Shown here: one piece after another, positions 1-52,083 of the stretch | How positions within the stretch are numbered: position 1 is the first letter of the stretch | Layout: the number at the start of each line of letters is the position of its first letter | Origin: Trichosphaerium sp. ATCC 40318 | Taxonomy: Eukaryota; Protista; Tubulinea | Assembly (NCBI GenBank): GCA_038496445.1 | Contig: JALMLS010000578.1 | Coordinates: 310,001 to 374,000, forward strand | Reading direction: 5' to 3' | DNA: 64,000 nucleotides | Program-made: the position numbers and the translations under genes | Notes under the pieces: generated by a model | The model's database searches: none | What the model was told of the DNA's origin: nothing | Seen by the model: only the letters and a program-made list of their open reading frames with translations

Positions 1-336
1 GAAAAAAATAATCACAAAACAAAAAAGCTATTTTTAGTACAGGTTCCACCACGTGTTTCTTATGGGTCTTCGTCTACGTATGTATTGTGGTGATGAAAAT
101 GCTCCAAAAATTATCTTCCTGTGCGGTAATGATTTGTTTCTTAGTTTAACAACGTGTGGAACTATTTTATCAACAAATTTAGGCATATCTGAGACTTTTG
201 AGACTTCCGAGGGTTCCGGAAGGCTGTTTTGCTGCTTGATTTGATTTTTTGGCTTTGCACTCATAATATTTACGAGAAACAAGATTATTATAATATTGTA
301 GAATAAAAGCCAATATGATTGCCAGAGTATTTGCAT
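1..336 (-). CDS. 5' part of a second GT31 galactosyltransferase paralog (continues off the left edge)
   Basis: ORF 34..336 is nearly identical to ORF 2707..3012 (signal anchor, then ...RRRPIRNTWW). An intron starts GTAC near position 40. Confidence 0.8.
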
Positions 337-1632
337 GGCCGTACAGTAAGGAATCTTGACAATTTATGACCATGATACTGATTGTTGAAAGATATCTAAG
401 ATGTATCTCGTTCTATCACTGTGGTAAAGACCTACAAATGTTATGTGGTTATGACGGATCCGGTCGTAATAGCTTGTTGGTGTAACAACAGTTAGCGAGA
501 TGACTCGAGGAATAGAGTTTTGTGAAAATTTGAAGTTCACGTGCTCTGTTATTAAATCGCTTTCTTGCAGTTGTATGACATCTCAATTTAGTATAGAACA
601 TAATAAATCAGTTAACAGATACGCCTTTTCCGTTACTTTTGGTTTCAGCCAAAATTAGCACACAGAATTGACGCGTAAGCTAAATTTTTTTATCGTAGCT
701 CATATTTCTGTATCACATCTGAAGATTGTCGTCTTAACTAATCCAATAATTTAGAAACAGTCCTGGTTGCAATATTCAAGCAGTCCATCTGAAGTTGCTA
801 TTTCGTAGTGGCCCACATTATGCCGAAATGCGAACAATGTAAAATCCTTGTCAATTCCTACCTAAAAAAAAAAAGGTTTAATGTCAGATGAGAAGAATTG
901 TAAGAAAATTCTCCTTTGCAACCAAATGTCTGTAGGGCTATGTACTTAACATGTTACTTAATATATAGTTTAGTTTCCATATACCCAACCTTCGTACCTT
1001 TACAATGTCGTTGTATTCTATTGTTGCGTTCTACTTTTGTTCATGTTCTCATCATCATAGGATGCTCGTATCCAGCTGAAAGACATCAATCGAGATGTTG
1101 AAACTAACGCCCTTCCGTTATGAATACAAGCAATATTCATATTCATTGTCCCGTAAGCCATACATATTCATGGGCGTTTGGTGAGTCAGGATGTTGAGGA
1201 GCTTTTGGTTTGTAGCACCTAGCGATGTTCCAAATGGATAGATTCAACAAGTTGCATAAAAAAAAAAATTCTCGGTTTTCTCTAGCTGTATTGTGAAACA
1301 AAACGGCACAAATTAAGCTAAATAGACAATTTTATTCTTTAATAGACTTACCGAGAGGTATACATAAGTTGTACGGATGTACAAGCACGTGTGATGGAGA
1401 AACTTTTATTTCAACAAACCAAGGTGTTTTCATTTATGTTGATGGAAAGAACACGCTAGAGAAGTTAAAGATACAAGTGAATGGTCATGTCAGAGCTATT
1501 TGTTTTAGTGAAGGTATAATGTATGATGTAGTAGAGAAGAATAACATTGATGGGAATAATGTAAGTTTATTTAAACTTGACTTGTAAGTCCACAATCAAC
1601 TTGGGGTTTTTTTTTCAAAATCAAGTGATTTT

Positions 1633-3012
1633 TTAATGATTCCAATCTTCTTGTCTTCTTTCCCACCACGACTTGCGTGGTTCCTCATGGCGAGAATATT
1701 TATGCCACCAGTACTTGTTTTCTCCTTCTCCACAGAAAGATTCAAAGTAGGTTCTGTGCAGTTCAGTGTACAAGTGTTTGAAAGCGTCTATCCTCACTTC
1801 CTGTGTTGTATTATTACTATGTTGTTTAGACACAAAACGTGATTGCACTTACTGGAATATAAGCAGTAGCACGATCGCAAGTATTCATAAACTGAGGTTG
1901 TATTTGAGTGAAGTGTAAATCAGCAAGCATAACAGCAGTACCAACATCTTCAAAGTAATTTAATTTTGGTCTTTGTTCTATTGGCTATTTTGTTCAAAGT
2001 ATTAGTTTTACCTCAACGTTGTTTCTAAGAAATGCTGATTTTGTACGCACAAGCATCCAGTAGCTATTATACATATGTAATGCAAGATCATGTGATAAGA
2101 TATAAGCTCCACCAATAGCATACTGCAGAGGAATATATTTTTGTGGTACCATAGAAGTTGAATCGTTGTATATTGCTGTCCGCCCGTAGTACACTCGCCT
2201 CTTTGGGAAGTACTTTGAATACTCTAAAATTTTGTTGGGAAGGAGCCATGTGTCATCATCACCTTTGGAAGTGTTAGATCAGATTGTTACTAGCAATTGT
2301 TTTTTACGAATGTTCAATATTGATAATGTACATTTTAGAATGTAGTCAAAGTTGTAAGTCTCAATCGCATATTTGATAAACAACATTGTCTTCATTGATA
2401 GGTCCTCGTATTTATCTTTTATTGGAAGTAGTTTAATATCTCCATACGTATCGTTCTCTATCAATATTAGCTGTAATTATCAAACCAAATTCCTTGCGAA
2501 CAAGATTGTACCTCTTTTAAGTTCCTTCATGATATCAGGACCTTTACCATCAATAAGTCATTAAAGTACTTTAAATTTAACAACCGTACGTATATGTTTA
2601 CCGCCCATTATCCAATATGCTTCGTACTCCTTACCTCGTGTATCTTTAGGGAATCTACCACAAAACGTTAATCACCTTAGAAAAAACCTACAAAAAAAAT
2701 CTATTTTTAGTTGTACAGGTTCCACCACGTGTTTCTTATGGGTCTTCTTCTACGTATGTATTGTGGTGACGAAAATGCTCCAAAAATTATCTTCCTGTGC
2801 GGTAACGATTTGTTTCTTAGTTTAACAACGTGTGGAACTATTTTATCAACAAATTTAGGCATATCTGAGACTTTTGAGACTTCCGAGGGTTCCGGAAGGC
2901 TGTTTTGCTTGATTTGATTTTTCGGCTTTGTACTCATAATATTTACGAGAAACAAGATTAATATAACATTGTAGAATAAAAGCCAATATGATTGCCAGAG
3001 TATCATTTGCAT
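1633..3012 (-). CDS. GT31 family beta-1,3-galactosyltransferase-like type II membrane protein (multi-exon)
   Basis: Exon peptides RRRPIRNTW, ENDTYGDIKLLPIKDKYEDLSMKT, FDYILK/GDDDTW (DxD), YAIGGAYILSHD and FEDVGT are GT31 motifs. There is an N-terminal TM anchor. Confidence 0.85.
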
Positions 3013-4323
3013 GACCTTACGCCAAGGAATCTTGACAATTTATGACCATGATACTGATTGTTGAAAGATTATCTGAGATGTATCTCGTTCTATCACTAAG
3101 GACAATGACCTACAAGTGCTATGTAGTTACGACGGATCCGGTTGTAGTAGCCTGTTGGTGTAACTACAGTTAGCGAGATGACTCGAAGAATAGATTTACT
3201 GAATATTTCTAGTTTTCACGTGCTCAAATACTTTGTTGTTACATCTCTATCTTGCGCTTGTGTGACGTCTAAGTTTTGTAACTCCATCTGTTATAACGCC
3301 AGTTATTTTTTTCGCTAACAGTGCTCCGCAATTCAGATAAAGTGCTTTCAGGAAAAATACAACTATTCCGTTACAGTTGGTATACTCTAAATTTGAGTAG
3401 TCTCATGTTGCGATATTCAAGCATTCTATCTGCAGTTACTATTTCGTAGTGGCCACATTTTGCCGAAAAGCGAACAAGTAAGAAAATTCTCCTTTACAAC
3501 CAAATGTCTGTAGCGCTATGTACTTAACATGTTACTTAATACATAGTTTAGTTTCCATATACCCAACCTTCGTACCCTTACAATGTCGTTGTATTCTATT
3601 GTTGCGTTCTACTTTTGTTCATGTTCTCATCATCAATACTTGGATCACGTGAATTGTATTTGGATTCAAGAATATTGAATTATCTATTGCATTCTTTTGT
3701 GTTGTTCCCAAAGAACGACATGACCTGTTGATGTCATTGCTCCACTTACAAACTCATTAGTTTGAATTTTTTCTTCGCATCAGACTTGCTCATTAGCATG
3801 TACTTATTCTCATAAAGTCAGGAGTAAGTATTTTCGTTTGGGTTCAACTTTTTTGGATCCCTTGGGTTGGTATTAATGACAAGTCTGTCCAGTACTCAAT
3901 AACATCAAGTCTCTCCAGCAACACAAATACCTGTTCAAAACATTGAAACCGATTGGGTGTCAGTATTGACAAGGTGGGTATCACAAGCGAAAGAGCAGAC
4001 AAGCTTGGATCATTGATAAATGCACTCGGTATCCAGCTGAAAAGACATTAATCAAGATGTGTTGAAACAACTTGGGTTCAGCCTGATAGAAACTATAAGC
4101 GGACAAAAGCAAAAAGAACTCCTTTAGCAATGATAGCAAACAATTAAACTGGTTTGCAACACCATAGTATAACACACTTGATTAGATCCAAGTCAAAAAA
4201 AAGGCTTTGACTGAACACGTGGTTTCTTCGAATTATAACTGGCGCCAAGTTTTCTGAAAACTATTCTTCAACGAAAATTCTACGTATCAAGTTTCTCAAC
4301 TGTTCTCGTTTTGTCTTCTATCT

Positions 4324-4985
4324 ATGGCATCAAAAAGTACTTTTCAACTAAAGGATACTTTACAAATCAAAGTAAGCCTGTGCTATTAACAGTTTAGCTA
4401 CCTGTACTTACAACTTTAAACAGGTCGAACATTTATTGGACCTTCATCTGTATATTATGGATATAGACTTTGAAGTGTATGTAAAGTGGCCTTGTTTATC
4501 TAAATACACAGCAATAAATACAAGATTTGATTCAGACATGAAAAAAAAAGGTAGATGGTTAAGAAAGCGATGGGTTGTGGCTACATCAAACATGTTACTA
4601 TCACTAAGTGTACTTCAAACTACATTTGATGAAAATAGAAAGAATGGTGAAGAGAAGGAGTGGTACGAAACCGGACAACTCAAACGACAAACTACATTTG
4701 TTGATGATAAAAGAAATGGAGAATCAAAGAAGTGGTATGAAAATGGACTGCTGGCTGAACAATTCTTCTTTGTAAACGATAAAAAGGAAGGAGAGCAAAA
4801 GATATGGTTTGAAAATGGCCACTTGAAGACACAATCAATTACGTCCATGGTAGACCACATGGGGAATACAAATGTTGGTACATAGACGGCACGATGTCTC
4901 AATGGGGATACTACATATCAATATTCAGCCAAAATGTGTCAGTAAACGGCTTCCTACAATCTGGGAATATAGCATCATTGAGTTA
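4324..4985 (+). pseudogene. F-box-like + MORN-variant (YwqK-like) repeat gene, probably decayed
   Basis: Exon 1 4324-4371 (MASKSTFQLKDTLQIK), phase-0 intron 4372-4423, then LLDL..IDFEVYVKWPCLSK..TRF..GRW and WYENG repeats. The F-box LPxE is missing. A frameshift near 4840 moves the repeat into another frame (YVHGRPHGEYKCWY). Confidence 0.65.
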
Positions 4986-5183
4986 AAGCTTATTGTAATA
5001 GTGTATAAATACTGCTTGAGACAAGCCAATAAAGTGTTACAATCAAACACGCAAAGCAGTACGAAGCAATGCTTTAGCAGGAATTGGGTATTACACTAAC
5101 ACGTGCTGCGCGTGCTTTTGGCATGTACAGCCTGAGAACTCAGAACGGAACAAAATATTGCGTGAAGTTTATTTTGACAAAGT

Positions 5184-6554
5184 TCAGAATTTAATAGTCG
5201 ATGCATCCACAAGAGAGCAAACCTTCATACTAGAAGATCCAGGTACTGTTACAGCAACACCGCTGGTGTATGGATTTACAGCAGACCACTAAATACAAAC
5301 ACGTCAGTACAAAAAATGTGGTTCAAACTCAAAAAAAAACCTAAAAAACAGCGACGACTCGTACATATTTAGCTCCTCTTGGAAATCCTGTTGCTTTGCA
5401 AGAAAACACTGCTTGATTAACAGGTGTACCTGAACTATCTTTAAAGTTTGAATGAGGATTTATACAATTATCGAGATATTCAGAAAGTAGCTTTGTTAAG
5501 GCAATATTGTTCGTCACTTGAGATATCTGCCAGTTAAACCATGTGTAACCAGGTTCATTACATGCGTCTATTACCATACCAGCTCCAACAGAGTTGAGGT
5601 AATCACCTATTAAGAACAAAATCAGAAAAAATGGCGAAATCACGTGAAACGTGTTGGTGAGCACGTGCCTATGAACTCAATAAAGGCTTCTGATTGAGTG
5701 CTTTGGTTGTTGTACGTTGTTGTCATAAGCGCTTCTAGATCCTTGAAGGCCTGAGAGTTGGTATCGTTGATGACTGTTGGAAGTCGTTTAACACTCCAGT
5801 ATGTTATTGTGTAGTTCCACAAGCCGTTCTTTAAGCCAATATAAGCATCATTGTATGACTGTGCCCTCACGACCAAGAACTGCTTCCATTCCAAGTTCTC
5901 GCGGTAGTGATTGTTTTGGGTGTTTGTTGAGAACTTTATGATGCTGTTTGCGATATTGAGTGTATCTACAATTAGTGGCCCTACATCTGGTAGCGCTGAT
6001 ATGATTTTAGTGAAGATTCCAAACAAAAATTTTCCGATATTGCTTTGTGGTGGTGGCGGTGGGTCCTGCTCAGACATGAGAGCTTGAAAAGCAATCATAT
6101 TTGCTGTATCAAAGTCGTATGATGATTTGAAAGGCTCCATGAAGAAATTAAAGAAAGTGTCAGCGTTTATCCCTCCGCCCTTCGCTTGTACTGCCATTCT
6201 ACTCTTTACACTGTACAATGACTGATCCCTGAGCTTAATCTCTGCTTGGTAACGTTTGGAAGCACGTGTACATTGTTTTTTCGAGAACGGGTATGAGCTG
6301 AGGAAATCGTACCTACCGCATACGCAATTGGCTACAGTTGTATTACAAGGTCCAGTACAGCTATCCTTGACACTCAGCATACCGGTACAGCACCGTTTAT
6401 GATCTGCATTACTAGGAGTGTTCCAAGATGTCATACAACCTTGTCCGCAAAGGAGAGTGCCGCAATAGTTCGCATCAGGTTTGGTTACGTTTAATTGTTG
6501 GAGTGCTGAGACAGCACAAAGCAGTGTAAATACGTAAACGAATACAAGTCTCAT
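5184..6554 (-). CDS. Secreted Cys-rich protein with amphipathic helical hairpin, copy A (3 exons, about 400 aa)
   Basis: Signal peptide MRLVFVYVFTLLCAVSA. ORFs 5640..6554 and 5341..5664 plus a last exon WSAVNPYTSG...TIKF*. Near-identical paralog at 26822. Confidence 0.85.
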
Positions 6555-6695
6555 AGTTTGGAAGACACTTTGAATGTTCTGTATTCGCTGTATGAATGAC
6601 CAATAATGACTTTACCCACTGACGCACATTCCTTGCGCTTTAGGAAGGCACATGTAACTAAGTTCTGTACAAGCCAAACAAACCTTAGTTTTTTT

Positions 6696-6932
6696 CCGGT
6701 GGTATTCAAGTTTATACCACTCGAGTGGATTTTGGTAACTAGTCACATATTAACCTGTGCTGCCATACCCACCAATGGATGACATTTTGTGAGCGAAGGT
6801 CGGGTTCTTGTCCCGAGCGAAGCGATGGGCCGACCTAAAGCGAACAGCTCTATATTAGCTTGCATTCGCTGTCCCATACTCGAATTGTATTCCGGTGGTA
6901 TTCAAGTTTATACCACTTGAGTGGATTTTGGT
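6696..6932. repeat. 41-bp direct repeat flanking a 155-bp hairpin-rich insert
   Basis: ccggtggtattcaagtttataccact(c/t)gagtggattttggt at 6696-6736 and 6892-6932. The insert has AGGTCGG...CCGACCT and GAGCGAAGCG. Confidence 0.8.
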
Positions 6933-7749
6933 GCATATTTTGTGGAAAATGTGTCGTCTGCTACCACTAGAACCTTACCTCCTCAAACTTGTATTTCAAT
7001 ACAAAAACGAGTTTCTTTAAACATAACCTCGCCTTTTCTCATAGACAATTAGAAAACGTCTTGCGAAACCAAAAAACTCTTTGTTCCAGGATTTGGTGTT
7101 TAAAGTTAACCTACCTTTTAATCCTGATTAATAGCCAGTACTACCTGCTCCTGCATTTGAATAAATACATCATATAAATACTGATGATGATGTGATAGCT
7201 TGTAGAGTCTAGCCGGGATACCTGTGTTCACAGTCATCTCAACAGATTAGGTTAAAGGGAGGGTAATCTAAGTGTAAAGAAAGGGGGCATTAGGCCCTTG
7301 AAGTAGATTAAGGCGCTCGGAGAATGGAATGACCATAGCCCTACGGGCATCTTCGGGCTTTAAACCCATCTAAAATCGCGTAAAATGCTGAAAAAATATG
7401 ATAGCGAACTGTGTAGATTGATTACTTGTTCAAAGCCCGAAATTTCATTTTTTTCTCACCTTTTTGACCTTATTTACACAGATTTGAAACAACTTTTAAA
7501 GCTATTTGTCCACTATTACACCACTTGGAGACGCATTTTAGGTGGTGTAGAGCAAATTCGTTTTTTTTTTCGCTTTCAAATTGAGACTTCTTTTTGAAAG
7601 TGTACCCATAGCATGTACTATGTGTGTAGATGCCATGGGTAGCGTTGTTTTGAATAAATGTGCTTTTAAACAGAAAGAATGAAAAAATGCAGTTGTTTAA
7701 AGAAAAAAACAAATTTGCAATAAAAAAGTGTCACAAATTTATTAGAAGG

Positions 7750-9047
7750 TTATTTTCCTGTCCCTGTGAGAAGCAATTCCATTGCAATTTCTTGTAAAAA
7801 CCCTCTGGGAGTAAGGGCTCCGTCTTGACACTTATACAGAATAAAAGCATTTGTGAGGGTGTAGTAAAACCAACCAACAAGAAGTGTCATGTTCCATTTT
7901 TTGAACCGCCTATCTGTACATAGGACTTGACCAGCAAATTGATCACTATTTCCCTTGGTGTCATCATTTTATTTTTGAACATACCTTTCTTGCTACTGTC
8001 AAATGAACTTTTGTCATCTGCACACAGTAGAGTGGTGACCAACTTTATGATTTCATTGTTATTTGTTGCATGGTGCCAATCTTGTGTATCCCACAGGCAC
8101 TTTTTTTGCAAGTGATTGCTTCAAGGCCACTGACAGTGGTTGGTATTACATGATACAATAGCGTCTAAGCCAAATTCCCCGGCTTGTTGAGATCCATGGC
8201 TGAACAAAAATTAGAGTCACTTGTAAAATAATGGCACCTTCCAATTGTTTTCGACCATTTTGCACATGACAGAAGGATTCATTTGGTGTGAGATGAGGTT
8301 ATATCAAAGCATTGATAGAGTCAATCAGATGTCTAGTTCGAATCATCGAGACACTTCAATTCTATGGCCCATGCGTATGGTTTCTTAATGTTGTGAGTTT
8401 TTTTACGGCAATTGAAATATTATGCTGGAATACAGATTTCATCAACACAAGTGAAATAACCTGGTACCATGTGGTGCTTAAAGACAATCACTAGAAATGA
8501 GTGTACCATGTTAGCATCAAATTTCATGTTGGCAGAGATGTTGAAGTAGTGATTAATTGGCAACAAACCTATTTTCCAGTAAATGAATTTTGTGCTTCAC
8601 CTGTGCTCCACAATGTGCGAATATTCCATATTCCAATAATCCCATGCCATATCACTATGCCAGAGAAGTTCGTCATATGGGTAGTGATCCCATTTTTTAG
8701 GTCAGTGTGATGTTGTTCATATGTGCTTGTGAATAACAAGTTTTAAAAATCTTATTAACCCACTTGAAGGTGAAAAATGCCATGGTGTCTTGGCTTTTCC
8801 AATACCAATAATGTAACGTTGTTTTTTAAGTTTAGTCCAAATGTCAAATACGGGATGTAAACGTAGGTAAATCCGTAAGGCTTCAATTCTGCTGTCAAAA
8901 TCGGAGCCCAAAGAAATATAGTTACCAGTATCGCAGATGTTATAAAGTACATACTGTATGGATTCTCTGTTTGACCGTTTCAACACGTGCTCCTTTGGGC
9001 GTTTGCCATAATACTTGGAAACGTCGTTGTTGCGACATTGGGGAGTT
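7750..9047 (-). mobile_element. Degenerate piggyBac-type DDD transposase remnant
   Basis: Frameshifted minus-strand peptides in the expected order: PGYFTCVDEICIP (D1), KKPYAWAIELKCLDD, HYFTSDSNFCS (D2), KGNSDQF...RRFKKWNMTLLVGWFYYTLTNAFILY (D3), FLQEIAMELL*. Many stops. Termini not established. Confidence 0.8.
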
Positions 9048-9109
9048 ACGTGTTCTTTATTGTGAAATCCACAATTCTTGGGTTTACAAAAGTTGTCAGA
9101 TGATGACTC

Positions 9110-9480
9110 GACATGCCATTTACCTTAGTGGTTGTGAACATTTAACAGACGAAGGTTTGAAAGCACTTACGGGTGTGCATACCATTTTCATTGATTGTAC
9201 AGGTGTAACAGACAAAGGCAGAAAAGCGCTTTCAGGGGTTCATACTATTAATCTCAACTTTACCGATGAAGGCATAAAAGCCCTAGCTGGCGTTCATGCC
9301 ATTTACCTTAGTAGTTGTGAATTGTTAACAGGTGAAAGCACTAGTAGGTGTTCATACATACCATTGACCTTTGCGGTTGTGAATCAGTCACATATGAAGC
9401 AGTGAAAGTACTTGCTGGTGCTGGTGCTCATACCATTTACATAGATGCAATTAAAATGACTGATGACAAAGAAATGAAAA
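9110..9480 (+). pseudogene. Orphan fragment of the 21-aa 'TDEGIKALxGVH' LRR family
   Basis: LTDEGLKALTGVHTIFIDCTG VTDKGRKALSGVHTINL FTDEGIKALAGVHAIYL, then frameshifts. No F-box or start seen. It abuts the piggyBac remnant. Confidence 0.8.
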
Positions 9481-10177
9481 ATCTTATTTGTGTATATACA
9501 ATATGACATATATACATAGTTAAAATTTTCGACGTGTCAACTTTGCATGCACACTGTGGACCATCTAAAACATAAATCATTTCCTTCACACTATATGCGA
9601 TTTACAAGACCTTTATACCCGTCTTTAAACATTAAAGAATTAAAAAAAATGAGGCTACTCTCTTTCCTTTCTTGCCAAATAAAAAATCAGAACAAAAAAA
9701 CACAAGTTGCCATTATAAATCAATATGTACACCACATTACCAGTAGTTTTTTTATTTTCATTGCGGTAATGAAAAAGTATATTTTCACGAAAGAGTAATA
9801 ATAATAAATAAACAAAAACAAGGTTAATACAAATGTATGAAAACCATTTATTCAAAAAAAAATAAAATGTTCAATGATTGTTAACAATTCGCCAACAAAT
9901 TCTTCACTGTTTGCTCCTTCTTATGGTTTTCTATGTTTATATCCAAGAGAAGCCAAATGTATAATGCTATACCATTTATCTGAAGAGTTAACTAGACTTA
10001 TAGCATCAGATCAGACCCAAAAAAAAAACTTCTAAACTATCTGGAGGTAAACAGAGATTTTTTTTTGTAGTCTCTTCAAGGTTGCTTTTTTTTTTGGTTT
10101 TTCTTCTCCTCTTCTTGTTGTTGTTTGGAGAAAAAACAGGGCAGTAATAACGGTCCAAAGCGCATGGCCTCATTTTT

Positions 10178-13100
10178 CTATGACACAAATGCGTTATTGG
10201 ATGTATTAGACGTTGAGCCCTGTTGACCTTGATAGACATTGTTGAATAACCCTGTACCAACAGATGCCATTGGTGCCGCCCTAGAAGTCAAGTAAGCACA
10301 AACTCATTACGCTCTCTATCATTATAATACTTACCCGTTCATATGTCCATGTAATTCACCAGGTTTACTAGTTGGATAAGCGCCGAAAGGTCTTTGAAAA
10401 CTCGAAGATCTGAACCAAAAAATAAGCAAGAAAAAAAAATAGGTTTAATAAAGCGTACGTATCAATTTGCTCTCGTACACTCCATTGTGCAGCGTGTTGA
10501 TCTGTAGTACTCTTTGGCTCAAACCCAGGAGGAGGTGCCATACCTACACCATGCATATTGCTGGTTTTGGCACCAAGACGATCAACAGATTGCATATACT
10601 GGTTTTGTCCACTATGCATTCGTGGTTGAACGTTTGATACAAAACTACCACCTTGATGACCTTGCGGTTGAGGACTTGGTGGTCCCCATACGCTGCCAGA
10701 CGGTTTATTGGTATTTGGTTGAGTTTGGAATGGATAAGAGAAGCTAGAGTATGCACTTGGATCCTGAGACTGCTTCTATGTAAAACAATTAGATGGATAA
10801 CATATTCTTTAAACAAAAAACGGTTTTTTTCTTGTTTTGAAGACAAGTTAGTTATATAAATTAACTCTCGTCAGTGGCATTAATAATCATTAGCCAAGGG
10901 ATATGACAAACAACTCAGTCGAGTTTTAACAATGGCTTTGAACGCCAAAAAAATAAGAAAAAAAAAAGAAAAAAAACGTACGGCAGGCTGTTGTGTGTTT
11001 GGATACGCCGAGTTATTCATAAAGAAAGAAGAAAATCCAGGTGGTTGGGATGGGTTACTACCACCTGGAGGTATCCTAGATTGATTTGCAAAAGGACGAT
11101 TGAGACCGCTATAAACAGAATTAGAAGCAAAAAAAAAAAAAAAACCTGTTCAACATACGCATTAACTGAAGATGGGCCCCAAGCAGAGCTGGTATTAGCA
11201 CGTGGCTGTTGACGTTCCTAAAACCAAAACTGTTAGTTTATATCCATCAAGGGAGGTCGAATACTCGTACATTTGTGGTAAAGACAGAAGGTACGTTAAA
11301 AAGCATTGAAGTGTTGTTTCGCGTTTCAACGTTCGTTGCACGTGGAGGTGGGTGTACAGAGCTTTCTTGACGATCACGGAACATTGATACATTTATACCT
11401 TGTGTATGTGCTCTTGATCGAGTTTGTTGAATACCACCAGGTGATAAAGAGTGCACTGGTTCCAAATGACTCTGATTCATTCCATTAGACTCAGTTTCAT
11501 CATTTAAAATAGATGGCAAGAGCATTCGTTGTTCCTCTTCTGCCATTTTTTCCATATCACTTTTTTGAGCTGAATTATGTCCTAACCATAACGGTTGACG
11601 TCCACTAATAATAAGCTTGTTAGGTTAAATAAAGTCACAAAAAACAAAGAACTAGCGATGAAAAATAACTGTACAACGATGGCGACAGGATTCGAACCTG
11701 CGAGCCACAAGGGCACTTGACCTCTAATCAAGCTGCTTTAACCAGCTGGCTACACCACCTTTCATTGGTTTAAACAGCCAGACGGTCGAGAAGCGGCATG
11801 GAGCAAGCAGTGCCACAACAGCGCTCAAAAAACAAAAAACAAAAAACACAAAAATGCTTAAAAACAAAAAAAAGGTGAAATAAAATCAAGTCCCACGAAC
11901 CTTCCTATGGCCTTTATCATGCCTGGCGCGCCTAGAGGGTCACTCCCCAATAGCGCATTTCCACGAACAATAGGAGCTTTAGGTGAGGAACCACGATTAG
12001 GGCGAAATAGAATGACCTCATCAGCTTCCATATCATTGGTAGCTGAAGAAGGTTCCAAAGAAGCAACTGGACCTTCTGCTGCAGCACGTGGAGAACGCAC
12101 AGGAGAAACAACACGTGTTGGAGAAGATACATGGTACGATTTCTGTGCTTCATTAAAGTGTAGATACTTAGATGCACCCTGTGATGTCAGGGAGAAGTAA
12201 CGCGAATAAACATCGTTTCGGACATCAACAGAAGGTTTCTGTGATGAAAATACACCGAAGCTTAATAGCTTGTCTATTCTGGCTTGAGCAGATTCTGTTG
12301 AATGATCATCAATTGGTTCTAGGTGATAATCGATGAACTTAAACGCAGAGGAAAGAGAATCAAAGCCATGAAGTTCAACCTGAGAAAAAAACGCATTAAC
12401 ATTCGTTTGGTTGTAATTAGATTTGTGTGCAAAAGGAGCAGGATCATCATTACCTCTTCTACTAAAGGTATTGTTCTCTTAACATTAAGTAGAGGTTGTT
12501 CGCTTGTTGATAAATTGGACTTTGTGGACACATTAAGAAGATCTTTAACTCCATTTCTTAAACTATCCCAACTAGCTCTCATCAAATCTTCGCTTGGTGG
12601 TGCTTGCATAAGCGCAGGATGAGCTCTGAACCAATCCAAAAATACAGTAGTCGAAGGGAGATACAATGGAGTTTCAGAAGAAGAAGACCTAACAAGAAAG
12701 GTTAAGCAATGAAGGCATCAACAAAGAGATATAAACGTACGACCATAGTTGATGAGTAGCACGAATAATGGCTGCAGCTGTCTCAAAAGTTAGTAATAAG
12801 GCTTGCTTCGATATCTCTTTCATAAACGGTTCTTGAGGTTGATCAGGAGATGCCGTCGAAGGAGGTCCAGCGACCAACTCTACTGCGATAATATTGATGC
12901 TAATCAACTTCAATACAATCATCTCAGGCAAAGCACCCGCCAGAAGCAATTTATTCATATCTTGGCGTATTGCTTGCCAATTAGGTTCGAATATTTGAGA
13001 ACTAGGAAAAAAATAAGAAACCTGGGGAAAAATATTTCTTTAACTGTTCGTTTCTTCGAAAATAGCTTCGAAACACGTGTTGACAGTAATAGGCATGTGG

Positions 13101-14890
13101 TAAACTGGTTTTAACAAAAAAAAAGCAAAATGAATACAGCACCCTACGTTCCCTGGTCCTCACGGACCCAAGTACTGGCAGGGCCATACCATGCTTATCT
13201 TCGCGGTTCGGAAAGAGACACGGAGTTTTCATGGTTGTATGGCCGTATCCATTAGTAATAGAGATAATTTAGATAGTGATTAGGTCGAAAATTTCAGTTT
13301 TCCGGCAAACTTAGGTTCAGTCTCCTGTACCTTTTTTTGTATAATACTCCATGCAAACGAACAAATTTAGCCAAAAATTGTGTTGTTTGATCACTCAAAC
13401 GTTTCTTATTTGGTGTAGGCGGTTTCGTCAGCCTTTGCATATTCTTGTTGAATAAAACAGCGAGGTTGTCTCTTTAAACTTGTTAACAAAAAATATGGCA
13501 AGAGAAAACAAAAAAACTTACTTTGCAGTGAGAAATGGGTTTTTTACAGCCAAACTTCTATAGTAGCGATAAACAGCATCAAACTCGTTCTCTCGGTATG
13601 TAGCAAGTACAGCGAGTTGGTTATGAGGGTTACCATTCTCTGGTAAAAGTCGTAGAGCCTTCTTGTAGTAGGTGGCTTAAACAAAGCAATCAATATCATT
13701 AACATGTGCTTATATGAAAAAAAAATTAAATAAAAGTCGTACCTGCTGTTTCCCAATTTTTAGAGTTATTAGCACGCACAAGATCTTTATGATACCTCGC
13801 TAAATCACCCAAGAAAATCAAGCATCTATGGCAACTGAAATAGCGTCTCAGATCTGGACCTGTAAGCGAGTTAACAAATAGAATCTTGTTGTGTAAAAAA
13901 ATCACAAAAAGCAATTGTTCCAACGTTCTAGAAGCAACACTAATAAAGAAAAAGACTCCATTAAGTAGTTACCACCAAAGAGAAAACGCAACAGTTTAGA
14001 TTAAAAAACAAAAGCGGGAAACAAAGTACGTACGTGCTAATTTACCAAGCTTCATTGGTGCATCCAACTTTAGTTTAAATTTGACTTGAAACTTGTCAAT
14101 CAACGAATGGTAGAATCCAGATGCCATTGCAAGAAAATTACGAAACCCAGTACATCTCCTCTTTAATTCTTCTATACAGCCACTTTCAGTAAAGTTGAAA
14201 AGAAATAGCAAACAAACTCTCTTCGCATTGAACGAAAACAGTTATGAAAAAAAAAAAAAATCGGTATAGCGAGAGGTACAGCTGAGAGAACTCGTGAAGG
14301 CCATTTGCCCCTTTTTTGATGGTTTTGGAAATTGAAGAAATGACAAATTCCGAAATATCGCACCTCTAGCACGTGCATAGTTCTTGCCCTTAGAACGAAC
14401 ATCTCTAGTACACTACTAAGAGTTAATTTTATGGAAGAACAACACAAGGGTACAACAGAAATTTCATGAACACAAATGCGTTTTAAACGCTATAGAGCTC
14501 GTAAAATGTTCTAATACTCCTTCCTTGAGTTAATGTATTATCTTACCTTTCTGATTTGCTTACGGTATTCCTCGATTACCCTATAGAACACTGACTTCCA
14601 TAGATTTTGCTCAACGTCGTTTGAGGCTGCTAACTCGTAATCCAAGAACAAGATCTCTTTATAGTCTTCTTTTAACCTGGAAAATTCGTTGATACACGCC
14701 CCCACACTTTTTACGATAATTTAACGTACTCATCCCTGATCTTGTTAAGAGAACTATCAAGAGCATTTGTCTTTCTCAAAAGCGCTCTCAGTTGTTTCTC
14801 TGCCTGAAAAGTACGTCTAGGAGGTGTTAAAACCTTATTACACGTTTTGCAGTACTGTAATCGCCGTTTCGCTTCACTACTATCTGTCAT
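10178..14890 (-). CDS. SMG7: SMG7/EST1-family NMD/telomerase factor (Est1 TPR region, low-complexity C-terminus, no PIN domain seen)
   Basis: Spliced peptides VEQNLWKSVFYRVIEEYRKQIRK, FRNFLAMASGFYHSLI, SCHRCLIFLGDLARY, GNPHNQLAVLATY...AVYRYYRSLAV, FVRLHGVL. ATG at 14890, TAG at 10178-10180. Confidence 0.85.
11677..11759 (-). tRNA. tRNA-Ser(AGA), intronic, slightly atypical
   Basis: GGTGGTG TA GCC AGCTGGTTAA AGC AG CTTGA TTAGAGG TCAAG TGCCCTTGTGGCTC GCAGG TTCGAAT CCTGT CGCCATC G. It has a 7-bp acceptor stem, long variable arm, G73, a B-box and a downstream T-run. Confidence 0.8.
13132..13250 (-). rRNA. 5S rRNA gene, intronic
   Basis: 119 nt, GGATACGGCCATAC...CCGAAC...GAAGATAAGC...AGTACTTGGGTCCGTGAGGACCAGGGAA...GCTGTATTC. 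Helices I, II, IV and V pair. Followed by an ATTTTGCTTTTTTTTT terminator. Confidence 0.95.
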
Positions 14891-50334: not shown

Positions 50335-52083
50335 CACGTGATGAGGTGCTTCTGTTGGAGAGTGTTGATTTTGAATTAAGTTGTTTTCGTGTTGACTTTT
50401 TTGTGGGTTTTTTATCGGTTTTTATGGAGCTAGCGCTAGCCAAACCAATTAATCTTATATTGCTACAAATGTTAGTGGTACACTACAACTAAAGTAAAAC
50501 TCTGAGAATATCATCTTCCCAACAATTTACGGGTATTCGAAATTATTGCGTTTTCAATGTCAGGTCCTTTGTACGACCCTGAAACTTCCTTTGTGCCCAA
50601 TGACTAACCTAAAACAAGTTTTTTGTTGAAAAGACAGCTTTCTTGTTTCTCGTCAATTATTGCCGAGGTTGACTACAGAACAGGTCACGTGACAACTTGT
50701 AAGAAGTAATTTTTTACAATGTGAACAAGTACTATTAGCTCAAATTCTTGGCCTTTTTTTACACCACGACGGCTTGAAAATAATACTATAGTTTTTATAA
50801 GCGAAATATAAGTGGCTGAAAAAAAGTCGGACATTCGTAGATATTATTGTCCGGCGCAAGCAAGTGAGAAACTATAGGGCAAATATTTGAAGAAATGTAG
50901 GAATTCTACTACAACTAGCAAGTTCTTGGGAGATTTGTCATTTGAAAAAAGTTGTGATAGACCTAAAGGAACAGCGGTAAACACTACTCATTCACGCACT
51001 TGGGTTGACAATAAGGTGCTTACCTCACTTTGGTTTTTTTTTCGTGGCACTGCAAACTAGGATTCTGTTGATTAGTTTTGTTTTCAATACCATACGGTTA
51101 CACGTGGTAATAAGCGCCCCTGTAAGCTGGCATTGGTAAAAATTTTAATGTTATTCGACGTGCTATAACACGTTAGAGTAAACAATGGCGTCAAAGACTA
51201 ATATCAGGGCGTGTAAGGTGGGTTTTTGCTTTATACCTTTCTTTCGTATTTGCTGTAGACGTCGCTTTTTATTGCTATAATTTAAAACGTGTAGTACCTG
51301 CGCACCGGAATAAAGAGGGTAGCTACATAGGCCACTTTGAAAAAGTGTAAAGGTACCGTATTGAAACATGGCTCAATGAATTACACCTGAATCTTGGAAT
51401 CTATTTATGAGTGATTTGTATCCGTCAATTTTGGAGTGATTTTATTAAGATCGAAAGTGATTAAAACAACATATCAAGTCTGATTGAGGCTGTTATCCTT
51501 ACGGTGACTAGGGTTTCAAACTTAAAACAGTTGTACAATAAATTACATGATTTAGTTGACATTCATCATCCTTCAGTCATTTCGCAATTATTACACTTTA
51601 CAGTCATTTTATAAAATACTTATGCTCAAATCAGAACGATCACTCAAGCAACTGTTCTCGTATTGACAGTCTATAATCAATCACCTCGTTGTTGTTAATT
51701 GTTCTTCATCACTTTTTGCTCTTAATACTCAATCACGTGCATTTTCACATGAATTTGTACAATTCATCTAGCTGGGGCAAATAATGGTCTATACAAATGC
51801 AAAAAGAGGTAATACCATCTGGGTTTTTTCACTCAATACTGATTGAGATAACCGATATTCTCAATCAAAAAAAAAACGGTTTAGTGTTCAATCCCAAATA
51901 TGTTTGTATTGAGTGGATATACCGCAAATGAAGCAAATGTTAGCGCATCACATTTATCAGGAACTATGCTAGCAGGATTTTAAGTGCAAATGATTGATTG
52001 AAAGGTTACAAAATCAATCAGACAAAAATGCATTATTTATCAACCACAACAACACACGCATCAACTCCTTAATACTACAAACA

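What the first reader, a model, noticed from the sequence alone, without database searches (positions are those of the whole stretch)
11605..13330. Two different Pol III genes (5S rRNA and tRNA-Ser) nested sense-strand in separate introns of the SMG7/EST1-like gene
Seen: intron 13002-13330 (329 nt) holds a complete, well-pairing 5S rRNA gene with a T-terminator. Intron 11605-11900 (296 nt) holds a tRNA-Ser(AGA). Both splice models restore the SMG7 frame, and typical introns here are only 40-70 nt. Known: 5S and tRNA genes use internal Pol III promoters, and 5S genes are usually arrayed or linked to other repeats. Inference: this compact genome may store dispersed Pol III units in introns, and Pol III occupancy or intron processing could couple an NMD factor to ribosome/tRNA synthesis.
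Basis: partly seen in the sequence, partly recalled or inferred. Interest (0 to 1): 0.8.

Follow-up and report, generated by a model that had tools for sequence, protein, structure and literature searches.

The report
5S and tRNA genes inside introns
In this marine amoeba (Trichosphaerium), an intact 5S ribosomal RNA gene and an odd-looking serine tRNA gene sit, in the host gene's own direction, inside two oversized introns of one SMG7-like mRNA-surveillance gene; for 5S this placement is not described in the literature searched, but nothing here shows a regulatory link to the host.

Summary
Rfam finds a full-length 5S rRNA at 13131-13250 (-) with 93.7 bits. ARAGORN and Rfam find tRNA-Ser(AGA) at 11677-11759 (-). 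They are the only RNA-family hits in 64 kb. Both lie on the strand of an EST1/SMG7-like gene (ATG 14890, stop 10178).

The 5S intron (13330-13002, 329 nt) is secure. It splits the EST1_DNA_bind domain between profile positions about 106 and 112.

The tRNA intron (11900-11605, 296 nt) has GT-AG ends and restores the frame. It lies in a low-complexity tail and has no transcript support (about 75% real).

The tRNA has an atypical D arm and scores 33 bits, against 56.8 for E. coli serV.

The other modelled introns are 49-74 nt, plus one of 206 nt. The organism is Trichosphaerium sp., shown by a 96% match to an MMETSP0405 transcript.

Best reading: these are autonomous Pol III genes lodged co-directionally in introns. 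Unchecked scan notes list at least 26 similar sense-nested cases in this genome, so this looks like a genome habit and not an NMD-specific device.

The parts
10178..14890 (-). Host gene, SMG7/EST1-like (SMG5/6/7 family, no PIN domain found). ATG at 14890, stop at 10180-10178. The N-terminal exons between 14676 and 13860 are only roughly modelled.
   Evidence: Pfam EST1 and EST1_DNA_bind hits on exon pieces. PDB hits to SMG6/EST1A 4um2 (1e-12) and SMG7 1ya0 (2.7e-9). An 800-codon frame stays open from 13860 to the stop through 11 GT-AG introns.
13002..13330 (-). Spliceosomal intron of 329 nt that carries the 5S gene (donor GTACAG, acceptor CTAG, phase 2).
   Evidence: The upstream exon 13471-13331 matches EST1_DNA_bind profile 53-104/106. 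The transcript-derived P0001, which starts inside the downstream exon, matches profile 139-281. The frame is restored.
13131..13250 (-). 5S rRNA gene, full length, 53% GC within 32-34% GC intron flanks.
   Evidence: RF00001 at 93.7 bits, model 1-120/120, with two non-canonical pairs. Composition.
13116..13130 (-). T4 then T9 runs directly after the 5S 3' end; a Pol III terminator-like site.
   Evidence: T>=4 runs start at about 0.022 per nt in this gene's introns, so a run starting exactly at +1 has a chance of about 2-6%.
11605..11900 (-). Probable spliceosomal intron of 296 nt that carries the tRNA (donor GTTCGT, the only donor in the gene without A at +3; acceptor TTAG; phase 2).
   Evidence: Frame restored, KAIG|S|GRQPLW. 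Five further short canonical introns and 367 codons follow in frame. No transcript evidence.
11677..11759 (-). tRNA-Ser(AGA), class II, with a long variable arm, G73 and a perfect B box (GGTTCGAATCC). The D arm is atypical: G14, C15, a C12.A23 mismatch. Anticodon loop positions 37 and 38 are both G.
   Evidence: ARAGORN. RF00005 at 33 bits against a gathering score of 29. E. coli serV scores 56.8 bits with the same model.
11661..11665 (-). First T5 run downstream of the tRNA, at +12 to +16; a possible Pol III terminator.
   Evidence: Not beyond chance (about 0.23 for a run within 12 nt).
12689..12740 (-). Ordinary 52-nt intron, transcript-verified.
   Evidence: P0001 (an MMETSP0405 transcript product) reads HQLW|SSSSSE across it.
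12380..12453 (-). Ordinary 74-nt intron, transcript-verified.
   Evidence: P0001 reads PLVEE|VELHGF across it.
10776..10981 (-). Third long intron (206 nt) of the same gene, with no recognised RNA gene.
   Evidence: Model. No Rfam hit at E<=1. The core folds with z -1.82.

Best explanation
Two autonomous RNA polymerase III transcription units sit inside enlarged spliceosomal introns of a Trichosphaerium SMG7-like gene, in the same direction as the host. One is a type-1 5S rRNA gene and the other a type-2 tRNA-Ser gene. Pol III would read each from its internal promoter (the 5S internal control region; the tRNA A and B boxes) and stop at the T runs inside the intron. Pol II would read through, and the spliceosome would remove both units with the introns, so the host mRNA is unaffected. 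Each intron gives about 80-140 nt upstream and 70-130 nt downstream of the RNA gene, which is room for TFIIIB and a terminator. The arrangement is best seen as one instance of a genome-wide habit of this amoeba. The co-directional bias is inferred to come from selection against head-on Pol II/Pol III encounters, or against pre-mRNA carrying sequence antisense to very abundant RNAs. Shown here: the genes, their strand, the intron signals, frame restoration, and the domain split by the 5S intron. Inferred: Pol III usage, expression, and the reason for the orientation.
For: 5S is full length at 93.7 bits, and a T4+T9 run begins at its first downstream base. The tRNA cloverleaf has intact acceptor, anticodon, variable and T arms and a perfect B box. 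The 5S intron splits one Pfam domain: profile 53-106 upstream and 139-281 from 27 residues into the downstream exon. An 800-codon frame stays open through 11 GT-AG introns. Two neighbouring introns are confirmed by a transcript-derived protein, 96% identical over the matched stretch of the query exon. The intron flanks are AT-rich and unstructured (z about 0), so they carry no further processing scaffold. These are the only two RNA-family hits in 64 kb, and neither lies in any of the 10 or more ORF-free gaps of 700-1570 nt. Using the genome paper's figures, about 23% of random non-coding placements would be sense-intronic. Intronic tRNA genes transcribed by Pol III are established in C. elegans (PMC4999229).
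Against: The tRNA's A box is weakened by G14 and C15, and its score is 24 bits below a canonical Ser tRNA, so it may be weakly active or decaying. Its T run is no better than chance. Under independent Pol III transcription, C. elegans shows only 56% sense orientation. If the apparently uniform sense orientation in this genome is real (unchecked and subject to reporting bias), plain autonomy does not predict it.
Confidence: 0.6

Rival explanations
1. The RNAs are made from the host's Pol II transcript. The excised intron or the pre-mRNA would be the precursor. The tRNA would be cut out by RNase P and RNase Z. The 5S would be trimmed to its protein-protected core, as intron-encoded snoRNAs are. 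Host transcription would then set their output.
For: Both genes are sense-oriented. Scan notes report only sense-nested 5S, tRNA and even U4 genes in this genome, with no antisense or intergenic 5S note (all unchecked). Strict sense orientation is the hallmark of intron-processed RNAs. The authors of PMC4999229 raise this possibility for tRNAs.
Against: A canonical Pol III terminator sits exactly at the 5S 3' end. The 5S internal region and the tRNA B box are intact. The flanks show no structure that could guide processing. No precedent for an intron-derived 5S was found: a search for 'intronic 5S' gave 0 papers. First-stage notes favour striking sense cases, so the bias may be an artefact of reporting.
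Confidence: 0.15
2. The tRNA is not intronic. The SMG7-like gene would end at the in-frame stop at about 11860 after read-through of the proposed donor (...KAIGRFVGLDFISPFFCF*). A separate gene for a low-complexity protein would start at ATG 11555, leaving the tRNA in a 305-nt intergenic spacer. Only the 5S would be nested.
For: The downstream ORF has an ATG at 11555. The donor GTTCGT is the only one of 12 without A at +3. Nothing beyond 11901 matches any Pfam family or database protein. P0001 ends before the junction.
Against: The frame is open for 23 codons upstream of that ATG, reaching past the AG acceptor, and the splice joins in phase. Both sides share the same S/P/Q-rich composition expected of an SMG7 C-terminal tail. 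The total length of about 1050 aa suits SMG7. The scan notes report the same nesting pattern at many other loci.
Confidence: 0.2
3. The two long introns were created, or greatly enlarged, by insertion of mobile or repair-captured DNA that carried a Pol III gene (introner-like or SINE-like). The orientation and the clustering in one gene would reflect insertion history, not function.
For: Each intron holds about 210 nt beyond the RNA gene (329-120 = 209; 296-83 = 213), far more than an ordinary 50-nt intron. A third intron of 206 nt lies in the same gene. The scan notes also report several RNA genes in separate introns of a single host gene, such as eIF4G.
Against: There are no target-site duplications at either boundary (read). 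The flanks do not repeat anywhere in the 64-kb window beyond A/T runs. The two introns share no flank similarity with each other.
Confidence: 0.05

Closest known systems
Intronic tRNA genes of Caenorhabditis elegans (PMC4999229)
   Same: Pol III tRNA genes lie inside introns of protein-coding genes. The host promoter influences tRNA output, and tRNA-host pairs are conserved between species.
   Different: In the worm, 44% of tRNA genes are intronic, which matches chance, and only 56% are sense. Worm 5S genes are not reported as intronic. Here a 5S gene is nested, and by unchecked notes the nesting is uniformly sense.
Intron-encoded snoRNAs (processed from host introns)
   Same: A small structured RNA, always in sense, inside an intron of a Pol II gene. 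The hosts are often translation-related genes.
   Different: snoRNAs have no promoter or terminator of their own. Here the 5S gene has a T4+T9 terminator at its 3' end, and the tRNA has a B box. Processing from the intron is untested.
Dispersed 5S rRNA genes of fungi (Schizosaccharomyces, Yarrowia, including tRNA-5S dicistrons; mentioned in PMC2911113)
   Same: 5S genes are scattered as single copies instead of sitting in arrays or in the rDNA unit.
   Different: Those copies are described as intergenic or fused to tRNA genes, not as cargo of spliceosomal introns.
5S and tRNA organisation in other Amoebozoa (Entamoeba tRNA/5S tandem arrays, PMC2652664; Dictyostelium extrachromosomal rDNA element as a Pol III complex binding site, PMC5391098)
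   Same: The same supergroup, with unusual solutions for placing Pol III genes.
   Different: Those are arrays or an extrachromosomal element. Here the genes are single copies inside the introns of single-copy genes.

Membership tests
5S rRNA (Rfam RF00001) | Full-length match to the covariance model above the gathering score, with helices I-V paired | tested here: met
   93.7 bits against 38, model 1-120/120, only two non-canonical pairs.
5S rRNA (Rfam RF00001) | Pol III terminator (T run) at the 3' end | tested here: met
   T4 at +1 and T9 at +7.
5S rRNA (Rfam RF00001) | Expressed and incorporated into ribosomes | not testable with these tools
tRNA-Ser, class II (Rfam RF00005) | Cloverleaf with a long variable arm, discriminator G73, and the T-loop GTTCGAATC | tested here: met
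   ARAGORN structure. RF00005 at 33 bits, above the gathering score of 29.
tRNA-Ser, class II (Rfam RF00005) | Near-universal A14 and R15, and a 3-bp D stem (which also forms the A-box promoter) | tested here: not met
   G14, C15 and a C12.A23 mismatch. The score is 24 bits below E. coli serV.
SMG5/6/7 (EST1) family, host gene | EST1 (PF10374) followed by EST1_DNA_bind (PF10373), forming a 14-3-3-like TPR domain | tested here: met
   Exon pieces hit both families in order. The best hit is 85.5 bits, E 6e-24. P0001 hits PF10373 at 29 bits. PDB hits to SMG6 and SMG7.
SMG5/6/7 (EST1) family, host gene | C-terminal PIN domain (present in SMG6 and SMG5, absent in SMG7) | tested here: not met
   No Pfam hit on the three long C-terminal exon pieces. 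The gene is therefore SMG7-like. The short exons were not scanned.
Spliceosomal intron (the two focal intervals) | GT-AG ends, and removal restores one reading frame and one protein | tested here: met
   For the 5S intron, the same Pfam domain also continues across the gap.
Spliceosomal intron (the two focal intervals) | Spliced junction seen in transcripts | not testable with these tools
The only transcript-derived protein, P0001, lies between the two introns.
Intron-processed small RNA (snoRNA-like mode) | Sense orientation together with the absence of own promoter and terminator signals | tested here: inconclusive
   Sense orientation is met. A terminator is present at the 5S gene, and B-box and internal promoter regions are present.

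The most novel reading that the evidence does not exclude
In Trichosphaerium, small-RNA genes (5S rRNA, tRNAs, perhaps snRNAs) are as a rule housed co-directionally in introns of Pol II genes. Their output depends on the host transcript: either they are matured directly from the intron (a Pol II-derived 5S rRNA), or Pol III is licensed only when Pol II opens the locus. That would make ribosome and tRNA supply a read-out of housekeeping mRNA transcription.
Probability: 0.12. Interest if true: 0.9.

Novelty: new variant of a known kind. Interest (0 to 1): 0.58.

Why it matters
Pol III genes nested in introns are known for tRNAs. An intact 5S rRNA gene carried as the cargo of a spliceosomal intron was not found in the searched literature: 'intronic 5S' gave 0 papers, and the Trichosphaerium genome paper mentions neither tRNA nor rRNA genes. 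If the uniform sense orientation noted across this genome proves real, it would be a natural system for two questions. The first is how Pol II and Pol III share one template. The second is whether 5S or tRNA can be produced from, or licensed by, Pol II transcription. It also matters for annotation, because long introns in this genome may flag unannotated small-RNA genes.

Tried and rejected
No junction or expression evidence was obtained. That stretch was excluded or masked in every later search or scan.
- Transcript-derived proteins spanning the focal junctions: the representative search found only P0001, which lies between the two introns. Word searches with the exons 11274-11603 and 10461-10775 and with P0001 itself found nothing more. 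P0001 is not on record in assemblies.
- PDB phmmer with the two exons that flank the 5S intron: no hits. Pfam profile coordinates were used instead.
- Mobile-element idea: no repeats of the intron flanks within the window, and no target-site duplications.
- Extra structured RNA in the intron flanks: z-scores about 0.
- Other small RNAs in the window: none at Rfam E<=1.
- Related 5S loci in metagenomes: an exact 25-mer gave 0 hits.
- Literature on intronic 5S: nothing relevant.
- The joined (spliced) protein was assembled only inside a local script, to check the frame and print 8-9 residues at each junction.
Full report
**What is there**

A gathering-threshold Rfam scan of the whole 64-kb window gives exactly two hits.
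- A full-length 5S rRNA at 13131-13250 on the minus strand: RF00001, 93.7 bits against a gathering score of 38, E 5.6e-19, model 1-120/120, two non-canonical pairs.
- A tRNA at 11677-11759 on the minus strand: RF00005, 33 bits against a gathering score of 29.

ARAGORN independently calls the second one tRNA-Ser(AGA). Permissive Rfam scans (E<=1) of 1-11820 and 11864-64000 add nothing. These are therefore the only recognisable small-RNA genes in the window.

**The organism**

Exon 12379-11903 matches one library protein, P0001, at 96% identity. P0001 is a peptide from the MMETSP0405 transcriptome of Trichosphaerium sp. ATCC 40318, Amoebozoa, Discosea. The published Trichosphaerium draft genome is 70.9 Mb, 37.69% GC, with a mean intron of 75.4 bp (PMC10521059). 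That fits the window's 34-40% GC. The paper contains no mention of tRNA or rRNA genes.

**The host gene**

On the minus strand an ATG at 14890 opens a gene. Its exon pieces hit Pfam EST1 and then EST1_DNA_bind, in order. The best piece is 13676-13521, at 85.5 bits and E 6e-24. That same exon hits the solved structures of SMG6/EST1A (4um2, 1e-12) and SMG7 (1ya0, 2.7e-9). No PIN domain was found on the long C-terminal pieces, so the gene is SMG7-like.

I modelled the gene by hand from 13860 onward. Eleven GT-AG introns keep an 800-codon frame open to a stop at 10180-10178. Their lengths are 67, 50, 329, 52, 74, 296, 53, 50, 206, 49 and 54 nt. Together with the 53-nt first intron, 11 of the 12 donors have A at +3 (GTACGT, GTAAGT, GTACGA and similar).

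P0001 aligns collinearly to three exons and skips introns 12740-12689 and 12453-12380. Those two small introns are therefore transcript-verified.

The joined model was built only inside a local script, and only the junction contexts were printed.

**The 5S intron (13330-13002, 329 nt)**

- The upstream exon (13471-13331) matches EST1_DNA_bind profile positions 53-104/106.
- P0001 begins 19 residues into the downstream exon. From its residue 8 it matches profile 139-281.
- The exon that starts at 13001 therefore begins at about profile position 112.
- One Pfam domain thus continues without loss across the 329-nt gap. The junction reads LHGVLYKK|SSQIFEPNW, in phase 2.

I take this intron as secure (at least 95%). 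Inside it the 5S gene has 80 nt upstream and 129 nt downstream. A T4 run starts at the first base after the gene and a T9 run at +7. T>=4 runs start at about 0.022 per nt in this gene's introns, so an exact hit at +1 has a chance of about 2-6%. The flanks are 32-34% GC against 53% for the gene, and they fold no better than shuffles (z 0.06 and 0.01).

**The tRNA intron (11900-11605, 296 nt)**

Splicing AAG|GTTCGT...TTATTAG|T joins KAIG-S-GRQPLW in phase 2. Five more short canonical introns and 367 in-frame codons follow.

This part of the protein is a low-complexity S/P/Q-rich tail. It has no Pfam or database match. The donor is the only one in the gene with T at +3. An ATG at 11555 would allow a separate downstream gene. 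No transcript evidence could be obtained. I put the intron reading at about 75%.

**The tRNA itself**

It has intact acceptor (7 bp, two G.U pairs), anticodon, variable (3 bp) and T arms. It also has G73 and a perfect B box, GGTTCGAATCC.

Its D arm deviates from near-universal positions: G14 in place of A14, C15 in place of a purine, and a C12.A23 mismatch. The anticodon loop reads UUAGAGG, so positions 37 and 38 are both G.

With the same model, a canonical class II tRNA-Ser (E. coli serV) scores 56.8 bits, which is 24 bits more. The stems are kept while the D arm and A box are off. This points to an atypical or weakened gene, not a long-dead pseudogene, but function is not shown. Its first T run (T5) is at +12, which is no better than chance.

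**Is the placement more than chance?**

From the genome paper's figures, my arithmetic gives introns about 25% of the genome, exons 46% and the rest 29%. A random non-coding site is then sense-intronic about 23% of the time, and two such sites about 5%. Landing in the same gene is far rarer.

The window is not short of intergenic DNA. At least ten gaps of 700-1570 nt lack any ORF of 70 codons or more. Both RNA genes nonetheless sit in introns that are four to six times the usual length.

Unchecked first-stage notes for the same genome list 17 findings for '5S rRNA intron' and 9 for 'tRNA intron nested'. All those shown are sense-oriented. Their hosts include UPF2, eIF4G (one 5S and two tRNA-Trp in three introns), ABCE1, NMD3, SIN1, GCN1, a CTD phosphatase, ACOT9 and a sirtuin, and there is also a U4 snRNA case. 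Searches for antisense or intergenic cases returned none. These notes are leads only, and they are liable to reporting bias. Taken at face value, they make this locus one instance of a genome habit. They argue against a device specific to NMD.

**Mechanism**

The most economical reading is that these are autonomous Pol III units, using internal promoters and terminating at T runs inside the intron. They would be tolerated in introns because splicing removes them.

The co-directional bias is inferred to reflect one of two pressures. One is avoidance of head-on polymerase encounters. The other is avoidance of pre-mRNA that carries sequence antisense to very abundant RNAs.

The main rival is snoRNA-like or RNase P/Z maturation from the host intron. 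It would explain a strict sense rule and would be new for 5S. The terminator sitting exactly at the 5S end and the retained promoter elements speak against it. An insertion or introner-like origin finds no support: there are no repeated flanks and no target-site duplications.

**Comparison with known cases**

In C. elegans, 44% of 609 tRNA genes are intronic, which matches chance, and 56% are sense. The host promoter modulates them (PMC4999229).

For 5S, the literature searches found dispersed genes and tRNA-5S fusions in yeasts, arrays in Entamoeba, and work on the extrachromosomal rDNA element in Dictyostelium. They found nothing on intronic 5S genes.

**Limits**

The runs found hold only 16-35% of the stretch's words, as contigs, and none is on record as RNA.

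Noticed in passing
window 10776-10981 (-): A third long intron (206 nt) of the same host gene. After a 35-nt T-rich head, a stretch of about 125 nt starts with GGCG and ends at a T6 run. It contains CUGA twice and AUGAUUA. Rfam finds nothing at E<=1, and the core folds with z -1.82 (9 of 200 shuffles fold as well). It could be an unrecognised small RNA, or an intron that lost its cargo.
   Followed up: partly
window 11760-11820 (-): The 61 nt directly upstream of the tRNA are 51% GC, against 26-34% in the other intron flanks. The stretch is unstructured (z +0.45). Its meaning is unknown; it could be an upstream promoter element or a relic.
   Followed up: partly
window 11605-11900, 13002-13330, 10776-10981: After subtracting the RNA genes, the two cargo introns are 213 and 209 nt, close to the 206 nt of the cargo-less long intron. 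This may be coincidence or a preferred spacing.
   Followed up: no
P0001 against window 12002-12943: The MMETSP0405 peptide carries an internal 22-residue duplication (EFRAHPALMQAPPSEDLMRASW) and a small indel (LLASVYFQ against LLSFGVFSSQK) relative to the window. This is either strain divergence or an assembly artefact.
   Followed up: no
window 583-1296, 3040-4375, 50422-51993 and seven more: At least ten gaps of 700-1570 nt lack any ORF of 70 codons or more, so the genome has real intergenic space. None of these gaps holds a recognisable RNA gene.
   Followed up: partly
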